Shown: positions 1 through 5,545 of the stretch, one piece after another
How positions within the stretch are numbered: position 1 is the first letter of the stretch
Layout of the letters: each line of letters starts with the position of its first letter
From: Paramicrosporidium saccamoebae KSL3
Lineage: Eukaryota > Fungi > Cryptomycota
Direction of reading: 5' to 3'
Length of the DNA stretch: 5,545 nt
NCBI GenBank assembly: GCA_002794465.1
Contig: MTSL01000096.1
Span: 1 to 5,545 of the forward strand
Position numbers and translations under genes: made by a program
Notes under the pieces: model-generated
Databases searched by the model: none
Told to the model about the DNA's origin: nothing
Seen by the model: the letters and a program-made list of their open reading frames with translations, nothing else

Positions 1-52
1 CTCATGGGTAGTGGAATGGGCCATGCATAACGATTCACGGGAACTACTTGAA
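1..52 (+). repeat. Terminal direct repeat copy 1 (52 bp; circular-contig overlap)
   Basis: ctcatgggtagtggaatgggccatgcataacgattcacgggaactacttgaa at 1-52 is identical to 5494-5545; lies inside a continuous reading frame. Confidence 0.97.
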
Positions 53-1150
53 ATCCTATACAAGCGGAAAAGGGATTTTTCACTGGACCAGGAGAGCTTG
101 GACTATGCTGCTAATTATGGAAGCCTAAAAGTTCTTCAGTGGGCTTACTTTACTGCTCCTACAGTACAGCCGAGTAAGGCTTGCATATCATCAATCATGG
201 TCCGCGGGTTCGTTAAGGTATTTGAATTTCTGTATCGTCACAACAAAGAGTTTCTGCCTGAAGCCTATCAAGAAACGGAAGCACATTGGGACACTATATG
301 GCATCATGACATGATTGTTAAATTGTATGGTATTGCACCTAAACTGGTTCCGCTAGAGCTGCTCTATCGTCATTCTATAGAGCTGAAGAAGTACCAGGCG
401 GCTCTCTGGACAGGCAAACAAATTTACAAGACAAAAGGCGATATAATCTTTACAGCGGAAGATTTCAATACTGCGATCGGACATGAGGCATGGCCATTTG
501 TTACTTGGGCCGTAGAGAAGCAACCACAACTACTGCCTAGCAGGGAAACTATTGATTCCTGGCGACCCGGATGGGGTATTAACATGGAGGTGCGAAGAGA
601 ATTTTTAGCGCTTCTAGACTATCTTTATGGCAAGACTAAAGATAGATGGTACATGCCCACGGTAGAAGACCTAAAAAACCAGCCAGCTGAATGTATACAG
701 AGTGTGTATTTTCATGATCCAGGACATTTTACTGATCAAGACTTGTTGAAGCTTTGTGCTTCCAAAGAGACTGGCACGGACATTCACGAATGGCTTTCCG
801 GAGCTCTGGGTATGGATGTCGCTAACTCGGAGATGGCTGGCGCGGCAGCGTCTATGGGGAACATTGAAGCACTAGATTGGATTACTGAAAAGAATCCAGA
901 AGCATTCCCGTCTAAAGACTTTCTCCAGCGCTTGTTTAGGGTGTCACGGTACTTTAGGAAGTCGATGGAGTTAGTGCTATGGGTTTTTGTAAAAAGGCCC
1001 GAGCTGCTTCCAGATTGGAAGTATATTCAGAGATGGACCAGCTTTGGTGAATCTTTAGTGATACTGGAAAGAGTGAAAGATTACCAGGAAAGAAACGCGG
1101 GGGAGTTGCAGGTAGAGCAAATAGAGCAAGAAACTACGAGGACTGGTTAA
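2..1150 (+). CDS. ORF-A 3' part: degenerate ankyrin-like repeat region of the 624-aa protein (the 379-aa track ORF at 11 is a truncated view)
   Basis: Frame +2 open from base 2 to TAA 1148-1150; ankyrin-like helical motifs SLDYAANYGSLKVLQWAY (95-148) and MAGAAASMGNIEALDW (833-880); similarity to ORF-B C-terminal half (KLVPL, LPS, KTK motifs). Confidence 0.9.
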   Translation, partial: SWVVEWAMHNDSRELLEILYKRKRDFSLDQESLDYAANYGSLKVLQWAYFTAPTVQPSKACISSIMVRGFVKVFEFLYRHNKEFLPEAYQETEAHWDTIWHHDMIVKLYGIAPKLVPLELLYRHSIELKKYQAALWTGKQIYKTKGDIIFTAEDFNTAIGHEAWPFVTWAVEKQPQLLPSRETIDSWRPGWGINMEVRREFLALLDYLYGKTKDRWYMPTVEDLKNQPAECIQSVYFHDPGHFTDQDLLKLCASKETGTDIHEWLSGALGMDVANSEMAGAAASMGNIEALDWITEKNPEAFPSKDFLQRLFRVSRYFRKSMELVLWVFVKRPELLPDWKYIQRWTSFGESLVILERVKDYQERNAGELQVEQIEQETTRTG

Positions 1151-1351
1151 GTGACGATGATGGACCGAGCTCTTGTTATGTGACTAAATATGAAACGAGG
1201 AGTCCGAGACAAGGAGCGGAACGAGTAGTATTTTAGAGGACTAACACTATAAAAGCTGGGTTTATTATATAGTGGGTTCTCCTGGTGCGTATTAGTGATC
1301 AATTTACGGAGTAGCAATTCTTCCTCGATTGCGGGTTGGCCTATCACCAAT

Positions 1352-1357
1352 AATAAA
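1352..1357 (+). terminator. Possible polyadenylation signal AATAAA for ORF-A
   Basis: AATAAA about 200 nt after the ORF-A stop; a single hexamer, so weak evidence. Confidence 0.3.
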
Positions 1358-1564
1358 GCAAACACAAGTACTTGAGTAGTGTAGCGACGTTTCGAAGGGG
1401 CTTTTAGCAGCGCTGCTTGTCAATCAGGATCATGATGTCACGTAGTGGGGATAGCACCACAGACGGGAAAGGGGGTTTGTTTACTGCTAATTTTGTAATA
1501 GTATGGATACCCAGCAAAGCGATCCACTCTAGCACACAAATACCCAGCAACTAGGTCTTTTCCA

Positions 1565-1718
1565 AACTAATCAATCCTCTGCCTCTACGTCACATAGCCA
1601 ACTAGTCAATCCTCTGCCTCTACGTCACATAGCCAACTAATCAATCCTCTGCCTCTGCCTCTACCTCTACCTCTACCTCTACCTCTACCTCTACCTCTAC
1701 CTCTACCTCTACGTCACA
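1565..1718 (+). repeat. 35-bp tandem repeat x3 (AACTARTCAATCCTCTGCCTCTACGTCACATAGCC); third copy internally expanded
   Basis: Copies at 1565-1599 and 1600-1634 (one mismatch); third starts at 1635 and resumes ACGTCACA at 1711-1718 after the hexamer run. Confidence 0.95.
1651..1710 (+). repeat. Hexamer microsatellite (RCCTCT)10: GCCTCT x2 + ACCTCT x8; (AGAGGY)n on the minus strand
   Basis: Counted directly: GCCTCT 1651-1662, ACCTCT x8 1663-1710. Confidence 0.95.
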
Positions 1719-1869
1719 GCGGTACATGGCCCCCTAGGAAGCGGCCAGTAGGCCTTTGAAAATGACGCTAGGTTAGTACGTCCGTGGCGATGCTTGCTGC
1801 AAAACAACTGAAAAGCACTAGCTCTATCTTATTTGTGTAATGCTCCTTACTTTTGCGTCTATCTATCAC

Positions 1870-4029
1870 TCAGTTATTGTCGGGGTTTTCACTACATTTC
1901 CCCGCTATCCAGATGACGACAGCGGCGTGCCGCGTAGACCAATTTTTTCTTGCCGCGGCAAAACTTTGAACACTGCATACCAACGACGGATTGCTGGCGT
2001 GTATCGTCTTTAGAAGCTCGAGATTGCCTGCCGTTACAACCATTTCCACAATGTTTAAAGTTATGGGCGACACATGTCCAATCAGCCACTTTACTACTTG
2101 TGCATGCCTCCACTTAAAAGCGCTCTCTATCATGCTTGCTTCAGCTTTGAAAGTACCTTTTGTCTTGAATGCAATCCATTTGAATAAGCGTAGCCATGCC
2201 TCTTCAGGCACATCATTTAATCTCAGAGCGTAAAATGTGTCCAGACTTGGAAGCACATTGTCCAAATAGTTTTCTAATACCCAGTCCATCTCCTCCTGCT
2301 TATTGTGCATGGCCGCGTAGACGATGCATTTTCTGCAAACTACTGTAAGTGGCACTAGCTTGGTGCAAGTTCCGAATGTTTCATGCAAAACTGCAAAGTT
2401 GCCCTTCTTACAGCCAAGTTCCACAGGATAACTGTCCGGGAGAGTAGCGGACGTGTCGTAGACCCATTTGAGGGTTTTAATGTGCCCATGACTAACTGCG
2501 ACATTTGCTATACCTTTCCATGGAAAATCCTCTACCGATTCAGCAAGTTCAGACTTTAATTTATCAAAGCAGACTTCTTCTGCCAACAACTCAAGTTTCA
2601 CATTAGGCGACAACTCGATCTTGATCTCATCCCGAAGATACTTGATGATTTGATGGGTGCTAATGAATTCCGAGTTGCGACGAGTCTCTCTCTCCCAACT
2701 TATATCAGGTTTCAACTCGTCAATAATCCACTTGATGATTTTTAAATGCCCAGATCTAAAGGCAACATCCAGCGAATGAGGTGGTAGGTCGAGTAGCGCC
2801 TTGTGTTTGTGCAGACATTTTAACGCATCAAGACTGCCCGTTGTGATCGCAGCAGCGCATACAGACTTGTGGTCGTAGACGACATCAGGATGTGCACTGA
2901 ATGCTTCCTGTAGCAAGGACCCGCAATCGTACGCGGCAAGCCATTCAAGATAGCTAGTGTTGATTGCCAACCTGCCATTTTTTAGTATCAGGCAATTCGT
3001 AGGGATTCGATAGTAGCCGATGCTAAAGAGGTCTTGAAGCTCATGGCTAGATTTCACATCACGGGGGGCAATGATGTGGTTAATGATGCGCGTTATAGTA
3101 TGCTGCTTGCCTACCAACTTGACGTCCTTTTTAATTTCGTCGACTCTTTCGGGATGGAAATGGGTAAGAATATTGAGCGCATCAAACTTGAGAATGTGCT
3201 CAAGCAATTTGTCATGGGGTAGTTCCTTCAAAAACGGTTCATTACACATCACCTCGTAAAAGCCAGCATTGTCGGCCTTGAAAATCATTGGCCAATGTTT
3301 ATTCCAGTCAAATTCCAGCCGGTCCGGAATGCTCTGAATAAAAGCTGGAGTCTCGTGTGTCATGGCCCGGGCCCAGTGCATCTGGTCCTCATCCTTCCAC
3401 ATTGGGCGATACATGAGCAATATCAGGACCTCGTAGCACTGGAAATCGAGTGCATGTTGTACTATTGTTTCCACATCCTTGAGTGCAATCACAGGACAGT
3501 CGGACGCTATGAGCCCTGCAAAGATAAAGTTTTCAGCGATAGCATCATTATCGTTTCTTGCAAGTTTTCTAAACATTTCGAGAGTGAGATTGAGAGATTT
3601 GAAATCCAGCTGGCTTCCCAATTCTGCTAGTTCAATGTAGTGTCCAAAGAGGTTTTCTCCCGGTTGAGTTTTTGACAGAATTGTGAAAATGCGACCAACC
3701 GGCGTATTGAGATCCAAGCCAACGCCGAATTGAGCAAGAAGGGACTTGGGGGTGGTGATATCAACGAGTTTAGTGTCGTTGGGAGTGACAGAAGCGACAG
3801 GAGGAGGCGTCGACGTAGGCGGTTTGGTGTCAGACGGCTTTGCACGCTTTTTTGGACGCTCCTCGTCGCTACTAGAAGACCTCTGACGCTTTTTTGGACG
3901 CTCCTCGTCGCTACTAGAAGACCTCTTACGCTTGTTTGAACGCTCTTCGGTTGGCGACAAAGATCCCTGGAGCTCTTGAAACCAACTGACCATGTAGAAC
4001 AATATGAGAAGGGGCAGCACGGACTTCAT
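1870..4029 (-). CDS. ORF-B: 719-aa putative secreted, nucleus-targeted ankyrin-like-repeat protein; paralog of ORF-A
   Basis: 2,160-nt ORF, ATG preceded by CAAG (A at -3). N-terminus MKSVLPLLILFYMVSWFQELQGS looks like a signal peptide, followed by basic KRKR/PKKR clusters and a Pro/Thr linker. About 7 ankyrin-like motifs (e.g. SLDVAFRSGHLKIIKWII, IANVAVSHGHIKTLKWVY, IVEMVVTAGNLELLKTIH). Function is inferred. Confidence 0.92.
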   Translation of the reverse strand: MKSVLPLLILFYMVSWFQELQGSLSPTEERSNKRKRSSSSDEERPKKRQRSSSSDEERPKKRAKPSDTKPPTSTPPPVASVTPNDTKLVDITTPKSLLAQFGVGLDLNTPVGRIFTILSKTQPGENLFGHYIELAELGSQLDFKSLNLTLEMFRKLARNDNDAIAENFIFAGLIASDCPVIALKDVETIVQHALDFQCYEVLILLMYRPMWKDEDQMHWARAMTHETPAFIQSIPDRLEFDWNKHWPMIFKADNAGFYEVMCNEPFLKELPHDKLLEHILKFDALNILTHFHPERVDEIKKDVKLVGKQHTITRIINHIIAPRDVKSSHELQDLFSIGYYRIPTNCLILKNGRLAINTSYLEWLAAYDCGSLLQEAFSAHPDVVYDHKSVCAAAITTGSLDALKCLHKHKALLDLPPHSLDVAFRSGHLKIIKWIIDELKPDISWERETRRNSEFISTHQIIKYLRDEIKIELSPNVKLELLAEEVCFDKLKSELAESVEDFPWKGIANVAVSHGHIKTLKWVYDTSATLPDSYPVELGCKKGNFAVLHETFGTCTKLVPLTVVCRKCIVYAAMHNKQEEMDWVLENYLDNVLPSLDTFYALRLNDVPEEAWLRLFKWIAFKTKGTFKAEASMIESAFKWRHAQVVKWLIGHVSPITLNIVEMVVTAGNLELLKTIHASNPSLVCSVQSFAAARKNWSTRHAAVVIWIAGKCSENPDNN
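3844..3926 (-). repeat. 42-bp-period in-frame tandem duplication in ORF-B encoding RSSSSDEERPKKR(Q/A) twice
   Basis: 3844-3884 and 3886-3926 are identical 41-mers; 14-codon period. Confidence 0.95.
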
Positions 4030-4768
4030 CTTGAGTGGTGCCCTGGTTGTTTACCTCGGTTTATTGTATAGCCCTCGGTCAATGTCGGTGTCGGTGTCGG
4101 GGATATGTGGGTTATTGGATTTTGTTACAAGTGGTTATAGTTGTGGTTATGGTTAAAAGCAATTGTCCTGTCGTGGAAGATATTGCAGCATAGTTGAGTG
4201 GATGCAATTGGAAAGTAGGCCAAGATTTCTTCATTGACTGCCAAGGTGTGGTGTGTGATGGACAGTTGTAAACAAGGCCTCTCATTGGCTAATAGCTGTG
4301 ATGTGCTTTGGACGAGTGTGAACAAGGTTATTTATTGGTCGTTGGCACCGAATATGTACCTGTTGGAGGTGCTGACAGAGTCTTATGTTGGGTTTTATAT
4401 TTTGGGCAATTGGTATCCCCCAAACAGCCCATCCATCTTGGCTAGATTGACATTCAGGTCCGAGTACGGGGTGTGTAAAGTAGTGGAGTGGGCCTAAAGA
4501 CTGTTTTATTAAGCTCTGCTGCTGGGCTTATGCGGCGAGGGGTGGACAAGTATGATCCGTCACTAATCAATGATAGCTCCGGTTAGCAACCTCGTCACTG
4601 ATTATAAACTTAGAGGAGAGGTTTGTGGTCAAAGCCATTTGCTTGAAGGCCTAGCGTAGCAAATTGATTGACCACGCTCACAGTAATTGGAAGCAGTATC
4701 ACCAACCAATAAATATTTTCATTCACACTCTGCCAGGGGTGCGCCGAAATTGCTTTGTGACCCATTGT
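4030..4768. promoter_or_regulatory. Divergent (bidirectional) promoter region between ORF-B and ORF-A
   Basis: Head-to-head gene arrangement; 7 CCAAT/ATTGG pentamers; AT-rich CAATAAA elements close upstream of both ATGs; no Shine-Dalgarno-like sequence before either ATG. Confidence 0.55.
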
Positions 4769-5545
4769 ATGCTATGCTTTGCGGTTGTTCCGCTCTTGTT
4801 CTTTCTAGGCAGAGGGAGTGGCTCCGGGGGCATAGACTTTGTTAGGTTGAGCGAACGTGGAAAAGACTTGTCACTGGGCAAACTCGACAAGGAGCTTGGA
4901 AAGGCCGTCGAAAAGGAAGGGATCCCTATTCGCGATGCGTGTACTATTGCCTTCAGTAACCAAATTTCTGATATAAATCCCAAGCGTCTTGTAGAAAAGG
5001 CGCTTCGCATGAACTACAAATACATTCTCTGCTGTGCTCAAAGAATGTTTCTTCTCGGCTCGGGGGGTCCGAGAGACTATCACTGGATTTACGCACGGCT
5101 GTTTGGATTGCCTTTGTTTCACGAGGAGCTGTGGGATGGCATGGTGTTTGACTGGAAAGTTTGTTGGGAACAAATATTCAGAGCCGATAACGTTGAATTC
5201 TTCAAATATGCAAGAGCAAATCCTTTGCTACTCGGCTTGGATACAGTTTTTGTACCATCTCAGGAGGCTTTGGAATTGTTCGACGCAGCCAAGATTCTTC
5301 AACATTTGGGGATGAATGTCAATCCTAAAGGTCGTGATGTGCAAGAATTGGTCAGATCGGGACACACCAATACTCTGCGTCTACTACACGAAAAAGATTC
5401 CACAATATTTGACGGTTTAACACTGGATTCGACTATTTTTGATCCTAATCTCCTTGATTTTCTTTTGTCAGTCAACAGCGACCTTGTGAATGTCTCATGG
5501 GTAGTGGAATGGGCCATGCATAACGATTCACGGGAACTACTTGAA
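4769..5545 (+). CDS. ORF-A 5' part: putative secreted ankyrin-like-repeat protein (624 aa when joined across the junction to 1150)
   Basis: Hand translation of frame +2: upstream stop TAG 4652-4654, first ATG 4769, then open to the window end (MLCFAVVPLLFFLGRGSGSGGIDFVRLSERGKDLSLGKLDKELG…FDWKVCWEQIFRADNVEFF…FDAAKILQHLG…VSWVVEWAMHNDSRELLE). Hydrophobic N-terminus; clear similarity to ORF-B. Start codon less certain than the frame. Confidence 0.9.
   Translation, partial: MLCFAVVPLLFFLGRGSGSGGIDFVRLSERGKDLSLGKLDKELGKAVEKEGIPIRDACTIAFSNQISDINPKRLVEKALRMNYKYILCCAQRMFLLGSGGPRDYHWIYARLFGLPLFHEELWDGMVFDWKVCWEQIFRADNVEFFKYARANPLLLGLDTVFVPSQEALELFDAAKILQHLGMNVNPKGRDVQELVRSGHTNTLRLLHEKDSTIFDGLTLDSTIFDPNLLDFLLSVNSDLVNVSWVVEWAMHNDSRELLE
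5494..5545 (+). repeat. Terminal direct repeat copy 2 (52 bp; circular-contig overlap, unit length 5,493 bp)
   Basis: Exact match to 1-52; 5,493 is divisible by 3 and frame +2 reads through the junction (…DLVNVSWVVEWAMHNDSRELLE|ILYKRKR…). Confidence 0.97.

What the first reader, a model, noticed from the sequence alone, without database searches (positions are those of the whole stretch)
1..5545. 5,493-bp circle that encodes only two paralogous secreted-effector-like proteins and no replication machinery
Seen: a 52-bp end overlap, one gene running through the junction, two divergent intron-free genes covering about 73% of the unit, and two near-equal spacers (739 bp divergent, 719 bp convergent with repeats). 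I find no HUH-Rep motifs, Walker A, J-domain, polymerase, capsid or recombinase motifs. Established: polydnavirus (bracovirus/ichnovirus) circles are replication-defective DNA circles carrying only virulence genes, and multipartite viruses and satellites rely on trans-acting Rep. Inference: this may be an undescribed 'effector minicircle', one segment of a multipartite element or a helper-dependent episome of a eukaryotic parasite or symbiont that delivers host-manipulating proteins.
Basis: partly seen in the sequence, partly recalled or inferred. Interest (0 to 1): 0.85.

Follow-up and report, generated by a model that had tools for sequence, protein, structure and literature searches.

The report
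Assembler-closed parasite effector-like gene pair
The "circle" is a small contig of the published genome of the amoeba-nucleus parasite Paramicrosporidium saccamoebae; it carries two members of a multi-copy, secreted-looking ankyrin-like gene family, and its end overlap is exactly what the assembler produces, so it is probably a collapsed tandem duplication and not a virus-like minicircle.

Summary
The sequence features are real: an exact 52-bp end overlap (unit 5,493 bp), a 624-aa gene A running through the junction, a 719-aa gene B on the other strand, 73% coding, spacers of 719 and 739 bp, and no replication, capsid or recombinase domain. [quoted passage not shown] That genome was assembled with Velvet at k=53. 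The 52-bp overlap is therefore k-1, the signature of a closed cycle in the assembly graph. It is not a biological terminal repeat and does not prove a free circle. A and B belong to one lineage-specific family (hhalign probability 99.5%) with a signal-peptide-like N-terminus, a conserved N-domain and degenerate ankyrin repeats. At least 10 annotated members lie on ordinary nuclear contigs. All five whose position I could check lie at contig ends, some in head-to-tail tandem. One 23.6-kb scaffold carries an intact paralogous convergent B/A pair in linear context. Most likely reading: a recently duplicated (tandem) nuclear locus of candidate host-nucleus effectors, collapsed by the assembler. 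A true extrachromosomal amplicon is not excluded (about 15%). The polydnavirus or multipartite-virus reading is unsupported.

The parts
1..52 (.). Terminal overlap, copy 1. It is identical to 5494-5545, lies inside gene A, and has length k-1 for the Velvet k=53 assembly.
5494..5545 (.). Terminal overlap, copy 2 (redundant with 1-52).
4769..5493 (+). Gene A, 5' part (residues 1-242 of 624). Signal-peptide-like N-terminus at 4769-4828; FDW...ADN stretch at 5147-5191.
   Evidence: conserved in L001 and in L007 A'
1..1150 (+). Gene A, 3' part, continuing from 5493 and including the stop. Degenerate ankyrin-like helical repeats. The NCBI model covers only 23-1150 (375 aa, P0001).
1151..1869 (.). 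Convergent spacer (719 bp) between the 3' ends of A and B.
1436..1600 (+). Copy of a dispersed non-coding element of about 170 nt, bounded by imperfect inverted 10-mers. Other copies lie next to family genes on other nuclear contigs (L004 9225-9353, L007 844-972 and 3721-3789).
1565..1669 (+). The 35-nt tandem repeat (two near-identical copies plus a diverged third). The unit is the last 35 nt of the dispersed element.
1646..1712 (+). (CCTCTA) x11 microsatellite. Its longest self-match is 49 nt, below k-1.
1870..4029 (-). Gene B, 719 aa, uninterrupted. Signal-peptide-like N-terminus at 3964-4029. Basic NLS-like clusters at 3838-3933, partly encoded by a 42-nt tandem repeat at 3844-3949. Conserved N-domain at 3160-3633, with FDW...ADN at 3268-3312. 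Ankyrin-like repeats at 1882-2874. The NCBI model PSACC_01280 covers only 2954-3993 as a spliced 182-aa product.
4030..4768 (.). Divergent spacer (739 bp) between the starts of B and A.
4030..4491 (-). Conserved upstream region of gene B (promoter / 5' leader). It is alignable to the upstream regions of the B paralogues in L007 and L006. The indels are not multiples of three, so it is non-coding.
4558..4604 (+). This is 2 matches against 0.17 expected. The motif is absent from the paralogous loci.

Best explanation
The window is a piece of the nuclear genome of Paramicrosporidium saccamoebae. It holds a convergent pair (A -> <- B) of one lineage-specific multigene family. Each protein has a cleavable-looking signal peptide, a variable linker, a conserved family-specific N-domain and a long array of degenerate ankyrin-type helical repeats. 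In B the linker carries three KRKR/PKKR-type basic clusters.

Inferred mechanism: the parasite grows inside the host amoeba's nucleus and exports these proteins through its secretory pathway. In the host nucleoplasm (or after import, for B) the ankyrin-like solenoid binds host proteins. Duplication and fast divergence diversify the repertoire.

The circular look of the contig is an assembly signature. Velvet at k=53 closed a cycle and printed k-1 = 52 bases twice. The most likely cause is that the 5.5-kb unit is present as two or more near-identical head-to-tail copies (a recent tandem duplication). The links from that array to single-copy flanks would then have been lost during coverage-based graph splitting.

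Shown: organism, family membership, paralogy, chromosomal paralogues, and k-1 = 52. Inferred: secretion, nuclear action, tandem copy number.
For: Identity of the contig: the window is GCA_002794465.1 contig MTSL01000096.1 (reverse-complement identity checked). Its gene model is named PSACC_01280 [Paramicrosporidium saccamoebae]. MTSL00000000 is the P. saccamoebae genome of Quandt et al. 2017, PMC5701793.

Assembly: Velvet v1.2.10 at k=53, with MetaVelvet coverage binning and a rerun of velvetg. The overlap is 52 = k-1.

Family: a full HMMER scan with B found 213 hits. Of the 28 with E<=1e-10, about 26 are true family members; the weaker hits are generic ankyrin proteins.

Nuclear context: family genes lie on contigs of 13 to 90 kb, in the loci read beside AspRS, SSRP1, SF3b10, Ras, eIF3, GDI and tRNA-synthetase genes. 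L007 (MTSL01000122.1) carries an intact B' (704 aa, 50% identity) and an intact convergent A' (715 aa, 37.5% identity). Head-to-tail tandem family genes occur in L004 and L010.

Contig ends: every family member whose position I could check lies within a few kb of a contig end. That is four fetched loci plus PSACC_02486, inferred from its locus tag to sit at the far end of the 35,270-bp contig. A sixth, PSACC_02487, is annotated as partial. This is what assembly-breaking recent duplicates produce.

Proteins: profile hits in the PDB are ankyrin repeats only. Pfam Ank_4 scores 1e-5 for B. The models are all-alpha helical repeats. N-terminal 12-residue hydropathy is 2.4-2.9 with no other membrane-like segment, and B has basic clusters at residues 33, 45 and 59. 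dN/dS is 0.33 (A vs L001) and 0.49 (B vs L007 B').
Against: No read-level data could be examined, so copy number and linkage to flanks are unknown. A tandem array with unique flanks normally leaves branch points in the graph, so a perfectly closed cycle is also what a true circle gives. None of the fetched paralogous loci shares an exact match of 28 nt or more with the window, so no flank was identified. Secretion is judged from hydropathy only; no dedicated signal-peptide predictor was available. The structure models have low confidence (pLDDT 58 and 48). One link from the L007 pair to neighbouring genes crosses a scaffold gap of Ns.
Confidence: 0.65

Rival explanations
1. A real extrachromosomal circular DNA: a 5.5-kb amplicon or eccDNA excised from, or replacing, a chromosomal family locus of P. 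saccamoebae. It would be kept at elevated copy number and would raise the dosage of two effector-like genes. It would replicate with host-cell-type nuclear origins and needs no gene of its own.
For: The graph cycle closed with no retained link to other contigs. Both genes are intact and evolve under constraint. The two long spacers hold repeats and conserved non-coding sequence that could in principle hold origin or promoter functions. From memory: circular amplicons carrying ordinary genes, effectors included, are known in fungi and trypanosomatids.
Against: The only evidence is the k-1 overlap, which a collapsed tandem array gives equally. There is no partition, Rep or recombinase gene and no long inverted repeat; the best has 36-nt arms at 75% complementarity. 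A paralogous pair with the same layout sits in linear chromosomal context. The spacer repeat is part of a dispersed chromosomal element.
Confidence: 0.15
2. A single linear copy, or two diverged neighbouring units. The contig would end on both sides in an exact 52-nt match shared by two A-type genes. Gene A as read through the junction would then be a chimera of two paralogues, and there would be no cycle at all.
For: In a k=53 graph a maximal exact repeat of exactly k-1 bases also yields a contig that begins and ends with the same 52 bases (inference from how de Bruijn graphs branch). The family does break contigs elsewhere.
Against: The shared match would have to be exactly 52 nt, since longer matches give offset ends. 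Known paralogues are far too diverged: the longest exact match is 27 nt. The A reading frame and its similarity to L001 and L007 A' run smoothly across the junction. No second close A-type protein was found.
Confidence: 0.08
3. A segment of a virus-like system, such as a polydnavirus-type virulence circle, a satellite, or one part of a multipartite genome replicated in trans by an unseen Rep-encoding partner.
For: Small size, apparent circularity, only host-directed-looking genes, ankyrin-like repeats as in polydnavirus ankyrin genes (resemblance from memory), and no replication gene.
Against: The genes belong to a nuclear gene family of the parasite itself. There is no relative in IMG/VR by protein or by the 35-nt repeat. 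No Rep, capsid or origin-like stem-loop was found, and the spacer folds worse than shuffled sequence (z = +2.3). GC (about 45%), coding density (73%) and lack of introns match the host genome's 47% GC and 76% gene space.
Confidence: 0.02

Closest known systems
Large lineage-specific secreted gene families of Microsporidia and their relatives (for example the Nematocida large gene families and the Encephalitozoon InterB-type families; recalled from memory, not tested here)
   Same: Obligate intracellular parasite of the same broad clade. Multi-copy and species-restricted. Signal-peptide-like N-terminus, clustered and tandem copies, fast protein evolution, and no informative domain hits.
   Different: No sequence relationship was detected. 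This family has its own N-domain plus ankyrin-like repeats. The parasite lives in the host nucleus, and B carries NLS-like clusters.
Ankyrin-repeat effectors of intracellular bacteria and ankyrin-rich paralogue families of amoeba-associated giant viruses and protists
   Same: The C-terminal two thirds is a degenerate ankyrin array of the 'G-H-L-x-x-L-K-W' type. The weaker HMMER hits are such proteins (for example Cavenderia DFA_05504), and PDB profile hits are ankyrin repeats only.
   Different: The repeats are so degenerate that only Ank_4 passes Pfam's threshold, and only in B. The N-terminal 290 residues have no known relative. Export would be by a eukaryotic signal peptide, not by a bacterial secretion system.
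Polydnavirus (bracovirus/ichnovirus) virulence circles with ankyrin genes
   Same: Works-like resemblance only: an apparently circular DNA with no replication gene and with ankyrin-like host-directed genes.
   Different: Not from a wasp genome. 73% coding against the low coding density typical of those circles (from memory). The proteins are four times longer and carry signal peptides. The genes are paralogues of the parasite's own chromosomal genes. Circularity is unproven.
Collapsed tandem duplications and eccDNA amplicons of eukaryotic gene clusters
   Same: A unit that closes on itself in a short-read graph. The family shows tandem copies and contig breaks elsewhere in the same assembly.
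   Different: Copy number and topology could not be measured here.
Eukaryotic nuclear plasmids (yeast 2-micron type, Dictyostelium Ddp type; from memory)
   Same: Size class of 5-6 kb, nuclear, circular.
   Different: No FLP-type recombinase, no Rep or partition proteins, no long inverted repeats.

Membership tests
P. saccamoebae secreted ankyrin-like family (defined here) | Full-length colinear similarity to other members (signal-like N-terminus, N-domain with the FDW...ADN stretch, ankyrin-like C-terminal array) | tested here: met
   B vs L007 B': 50% identity over residues 1-715. B vs L006: 41% over 1-716. A vs L007 A': 37.5% over 27-616. Family alignment A2. A-type vs B-type profiles: probability 99.5%.
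Ankyrin repeat proteins (Pfam clan Ank) | Repeats reaching the Pfam gathering score | tested here: inconclusive
   B: Ank_4 26.1 bits against a cut-off of 22.7 (met); Ank_2 and Ank_3 are below cut-off. A: Ank_4 15.8 bits, below cut-off. L007 B': Ank_4 36.2 bits. The family profile hits only ankyrin chains in the PDB, E=4.5e-6.
Secreted effector of a eukaryotic parasite | N-terminal signal peptide and no further membrane segment | tested here: inconclusive
   The 12-residue hydropathy maximum is 2.9 (A, residues 2-13) and 2.4 (B, residues 4-15). No 19-residue window exceeds 1.6 elsewhere. N-termini of the same type occur in paralogues. No dedicated predictor and no experimental data were available.
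Secreted effector of a eukaryotic parasite | Presence of the protein in the host compartment | not testable with these tools
   Needs localisation or proteomics of infected Saccamoeba nuclei.
Extrachromosomal circular DNA / nuclear plasmid | Covalently closed circle shown by reads or physical assay | not testable with these tools
   Only the assembler's k-1 overlap is available.
Extrachromosomal circular DNA / nuclear plasmid | Own maintenance genes (Rep, partition, FLP-type recombinase) or long inverted repeats | tested here: not met
   No such Pfam or NCBIfam domain in any ORF. The best inverted repeat has 36-nt arms at 75% complementarity.
Polydnavirus virulence circle | Origin in a parasitoid wasp genome or virion, with relatives among viral sequences | tested here: not met
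   The contig and its paralogues belong to the P. saccamoebae assembly. There are no relatives in IMG/VR.
CRESS-DNA / multipartite ssDNA virus segment or satellite | Rep (HUH + helicase) in cis, or a conserved origin stem-loop shared with a helper | tested here: not met
   No Rep domain. The convergent spacer shows no above-chance fold (z = +2.3). The spacer repeat is absent from IMG/VR.
Tandem array collapsed by the assembler | Coverage a multiple of the genome's, and reads joining the unit to chromosomal flanks | not testable with these tools
   Indirect support only: k-1 overlap, tandem family genes in L004 and L010, and family genes at contig ends.

The most novel reading that the evidence does not exclude
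The 5.5-kb unit exists in P. saccamoebae cells as a free, multi-copy circular amplicon that carries nothing but two candidate host-nucleus effectors. That would be a gene-dosage device for virulence genes in an intranuclear fungal parasite, maintained without any element-encoded replication function.
Probability: 0.13. Interest if true: 0.65.

Novelty: new member of a known kind. Interest (0 to 1): 0.27.

Why it matters
Taken as a minicircle, the finding would have been striking, but the only evidence for a circle is an assembler signature. What remains is still useful. It is an undescribed, fast-evolving, multi-copy family of secreted-looking ankyrin-like proteins in a parasite that lives inside its host's nucleus. 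One member carries nuclear-localisation-like clusters. The public annotation truncates, mis-splices or omits most members I looked at. These are obvious candidates for host-nucleus manipulation in the lineage that leads to Microsporidia. The case is also a general caution: an end overlap of exactly k-1 bases in a de Bruijn assembly says nothing about topology.

Tried and rejected
- Word-indexed protein searches with B and with the family alignment were swamped by generic ankyrin candidates. The B search returned nothing and the alignment search returned three proteins. Only the full HMMER scan found the family.
- IMG/VR scans by A/P0002 patterns, by B patterns and by the 35-nt repeat core found nothing. 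The JGI metagenome-contig scan found nothing. Plasmid blastn found nothing.
- Rfam, tRNA, and promoter/terminator scans gave nothing above chance.
- The convergent spacer folds worse than shuffles.
- The 87-aa ORF at 4234-4497 looked conserved in L007, but the alignment has indels that are not multiples of three, so I read it as conserved non-coding sequence. It has no Pfam hit.
- Structure prediction gave low-confidence all-helical models, and Foldseek against the PDB gave no hit at E<=1e-3, only generic alpha-solenoids.
- No telomere-type repeats lie at the family-bearing contig ends.
- No exact match of 28 nt or more joins the window to the fetched paralogous loci.
- Full-length B is not on record in the contig index.
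- Literature searches found no description of this family or of the samples that hold its relatives.
Full report
**1. What is in the window**

Bases 1-52 and 5494-5545 are identical, so the non-redundant unit is 5,493 bp. On the + strand an ORF opens at 4655. Its first ATG is at 4769. It crosses the junction in frame and stops at 1150, giving 624 aa (gene A). On the - strand an uninterrupted ORF runs 4029..1870, giving 719 aa (gene B). Together they cover 73.5% of the unit.

The 3' ends face each other across 719 bp (1151-1869). This spacer holds a 35-nt repeat (2.6 copies) followed by (CCTCTA)x11. The 5' ends are separated by 739 bp (4030-4768). GC is about 45% throughout, codon use is even, and CpG is mildly depleted. 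There are no tRNA genes, no Rfam matches, and no excess of bacterial promoter or terminator patterns.

**2. Where it comes from**

A look-up of a 99%-identical protein returned the window itself: GenBank contig MTSL01000096.1 (5,545 bp) of assembly GCA_002794465.1 (reverse-complement identity verified). The source names the gene model "PSACC_01280 [Paramicrosporidium saccamoebae]". MTSL00000000 is the genome of P. saccamoebae KSL3, a rozellid (Rozellomycota) that grows inside the nucleus of Saccamoeba. It was published by Quandt et al. 2017 (PMC5701793). That genome is 7.3 Mb, 47% GC and 76% gene space, which fits the window.

**3. The "circle"**

The paper states that the Illumina metagenome was assembled with Velvet v1.2.10 "with a kmer size of 53". 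It was binned by coverage with MetaVelvet and velvetg was rerun. From established knowledge of de Bruijn assemblers, a node of N overlapping k-mers in Velvet is printed as N+k-1 bases. A node that closes on itself therefore carries the same k-1 bases at both ends. Here 5,493 + 52 = 5,545 and 52 = k-1.

So the overlap is far beyond chance, but it is the assembler's mark of a closed cycle and not a biological terminal repeat. Three situations give such a cycle:
- (a) a free circle;
- (b) two or more near-identical head-to-tail copies whose links to single-copy flanks were dropped, which coverage-based splitting makes likely for a higher-coverage repeat;
- (c) a segment bounded by an exact repeat of exactly 52 nt.

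A relative from another sample (L001) is colinear with gene A straight across the junction. The join therefore reflects a real gene, which weakens (c).

**4. The genes are members of a nuclear gene family of the parasite**

A full HMMER scan of 1.84 billion representatives with B gave 213 hits. Of the 28 with E<=1e-10, about 26 are true relatives with the same layout. Weaker hits are generic ankyrin proteins of protists and giant-virus-like sequences.

Named members in P. saccamoebae are PSACC_00147, 00972, 01280 (the window), 01592, 01724, 01731, 02471, 02486, 02487 and 03043. They lie on contigs of 13-90 kb. In the fetched loci their neighbours are ordinary housekeeping genes: AspRS, a cNMP-binding protein, tetraspanin, SSRP1/POB3, SF3b10, a Ras-type GTPase (L004); eIF3 and GDI (L006); an LRR protein (L007); and a tRNA synthetase (L010).

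The most telling locus is L007 (MTSL01000122.1, 23.6 kb). It carries an intact B paralogue (1443-3557, 704 aa, 50% identity over the full length). Convergent with it is an intact, unannotated A paralogue (5985-3838, 715 aa, 37.5% identity). This is the same A -> <- B module in linear context. DNA similarity extends about 460 bp upstream of B.

L004 and L010 each hold two family genes head to tail. Every P. saccamoebae member whose position I could check lies within a few kb of a contig end. That is four fetched loci plus PSACC_02486, which by its locus tag is the last gene of the 35,270-bp contig whose first gene is PSACC_02471. PSACC_02487, on another contig, is annotated as partial. No telomere repeats are seen there. 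The simplest reading is that recent near-identical duplicates of family genes break the short-read assembly. That is the situation that also produces a closed cycle for a tandem unit. None of the fetched loci shares 28 nt or more of exact sequence with the window, so I could not identify its flanks.

**5. What the proteins look like**

A-type (A, L007 A', L001) and B-type profiles align over 457 columns with 99.5% probability and E=6e-23. A and B alone give BLASTP E=5e-11.

The layout has four parts:
- A hydrophobic N-terminus (12-residue hydropathy 2.9 in A and 2.4 in B) with no later membrane-like segment.
- A variable linker. In B it contains three basic clusters of the KRKR/PKKR type, two of them made by a 42-nt coding repeat.
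- A long array of degenerate ankyrin-type helix pairs. Evidence: Ank_4 at 1e-5 in B and 7e-9 in L007 B', and family-profile hits in the PDB that are ankyrin repeats only, best E=4.5e-6.

AlphaFold models are all-helical repeats but of low confidence (pLDDT 58 and 48). Foldseek finds only generic solenoids, none at E<=1e-3. The genes are intact and under relaxed purifying selection: dN/dS is 0.33 for A vs L001 and 0.49 for B vs L007 B'.

Relatives outside the reference strain come from two JGI metagenomes (3300042203 and 3300042204) and one Logan run (SRR16214429). They are probably related rozellids.

**6. Most likely mechanism**

Shown: a nuclear, multi-copy, fast-evolving family with signal-like N-termini and protein-binding repeats, in an organism that lives in its host's nucleus.

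Inferred: the proteins are exported by the parasite's secretory pathway into the host nucleoplasm. B's basic clusters would allow import if release occurs in the cytoplasm. The solenoids would then bind host nuclear proteins. Tandem duplication and divergence expand the repertoire. The 5.5-kb unit is most likely a recent tandem duplicate collapsed into a cycle by Velvet (confidence about 0.65 for the whole statement, and well above 0.9 for "nuclear gene-family locus of P. saccamoebae").

**7. Rivals**

A genuine extrachromosomal amplicon cannot be excluded without reads (about 0.15). It would still be derived from this chromosomal family and carries no maintenance genes and no long inverted repeats. 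A chimera at an exact 52-mer is possible but needs a coincidence and close paralogues that were not found (about 0.08). A virus-like segment (polydnavirus-type, satellite, multipartite) has nothing in its favour beyond size and gene content (about 0.02).

**8. The spacers**

The 35-nt repeat is not a private feature of a circle. It is the last 35 nt of a non-coding element of about 170 nt (window 1436-1600) bounded by imperfect inverted 10-mers. Other copies lie upstream of the family gene in L004 (9225-9353) and at two places in L007 (844-972 and 3721-3789). In the window its end was triplicated and then extended by a hexamer microsatellite.

The first ~90 bp upstream of B's ATG are more conserved among three paralogues than the coding sequence is. 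This suggests a shared promoter or leader, or gene conversion. The two CGTCAC-type motifs at 4558 and 4593 are real (2 matches against 0.17 expected) but are absent from paralogous loci.

**9. Comparison with known systems, and novelty**

Functionally the closest things are the large secreted, lineage-specific gene families of Microsporidia and the ankyrin-repeat effectors of intracellular microbes. Both comparisons are from memory and neither was confirmed by sequence. The family itself appears undescribed and is poorly annotated. I rate it a new member of a known kind. The minicircle idea is not established. Interest is 0.27 overall. If free circles were shown, interest would be about 0.65.

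Noticed in passing
window 1436-1600; L004 9225-9353; L007 844-972 and 3721-3789: A dispersed non-coding element of about 170 nt, bounded by imperfect inverted 10-mers, lies next to family genes on several nuclear contigs. It could be a MITE-like repeat, a shared regulatory module or a small RNA gene. There is no Rfam match.
   Followed up: partly
window 23-1150 (+) and 2954-3993 (-): The public gene models on this contig are a 375-aa product and a spliced 182-aa product (PSACC_01280). Both are much shorter than the uninterrupted 624-aa and 719-aa ORFs. The 5' part of gene A is missed because it lies at the other end of the contig.
   Followed up: yes
L007 3838-5985 (-): An intact 715-aa A-type paralogue on MTSL01000122.1 has no gene model in the public record. 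Upstream, L007 289-852 holds a 187-aa ORF that looks like the N-terminal fragment of a further family gene. The public model PSACC_01724 joins part of it to part of B'.
   Followed up: partly
L004 10001-13282; L010 500-4761; proteins P0006, P0007, P0023: Several public models fuse two neighbouring tandem family genes into one product; a second signal-like segment appears in the middle of the protein. The real family count is therefore higher than the annotation suggests.
   Followed up: partly
MTSL01000165.1 (PSACC_02471 and PSACC_02486), PSACC_02487: By their locus tags, family members appear to sit at both ends of the same 35-kb contig, and PSACC_02487 on another contig is only a partial model. 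Family clusters appear to be the places where this assembly breaks. No telomere repeats were seen at the ends examined.
   Followed up: partly
window 4030-4120; L007 1352-1442; L006 1-68: The ~90 bp immediately upstream of the B-type start codons are more conserved among three paralogues than the coding regions are. Contig L006 ends inside this stretch.
   Followed up: partly
L001 1846-1983 (-) and 2000-2382: In the environmental relative, the A-type gene is followed convergently by only a short remnant resembling the C-terminus of a B-type gene, then by unrelated sequence. The A/B pairing is therefore old but not always kept whole.
   Followed up: partly
window 3844-3949: A 42-nt coding tandem repeat duplicates a 14-residue serine/acidic/basic block in gene B and so creates two of its three NLS-like clusters. 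The paralogues L007 B' and PSACC_01731 have fewer copies.
   Followed up: partly
L001, L005, L008, L009 (JGI 3300042203 and 3300042204); L002 (Logan SRR16214429): Family relatives at 35-48% identity occur in two JGI metagenomes and one public run of unknown origin, presumably uncultured relatives of Paramicrosporidium. No paper mentioning these samples was found.
   Followed up: partly
window 4558-4604: Two copies of a 12-nt CGTCAC-type motif lie 35 nt apart, about 165-210 nt upstream of gene A's start. The motif shares half-sites with the 35-nt repeat unit and is not found in paralogous loci.
   Followed up: partly
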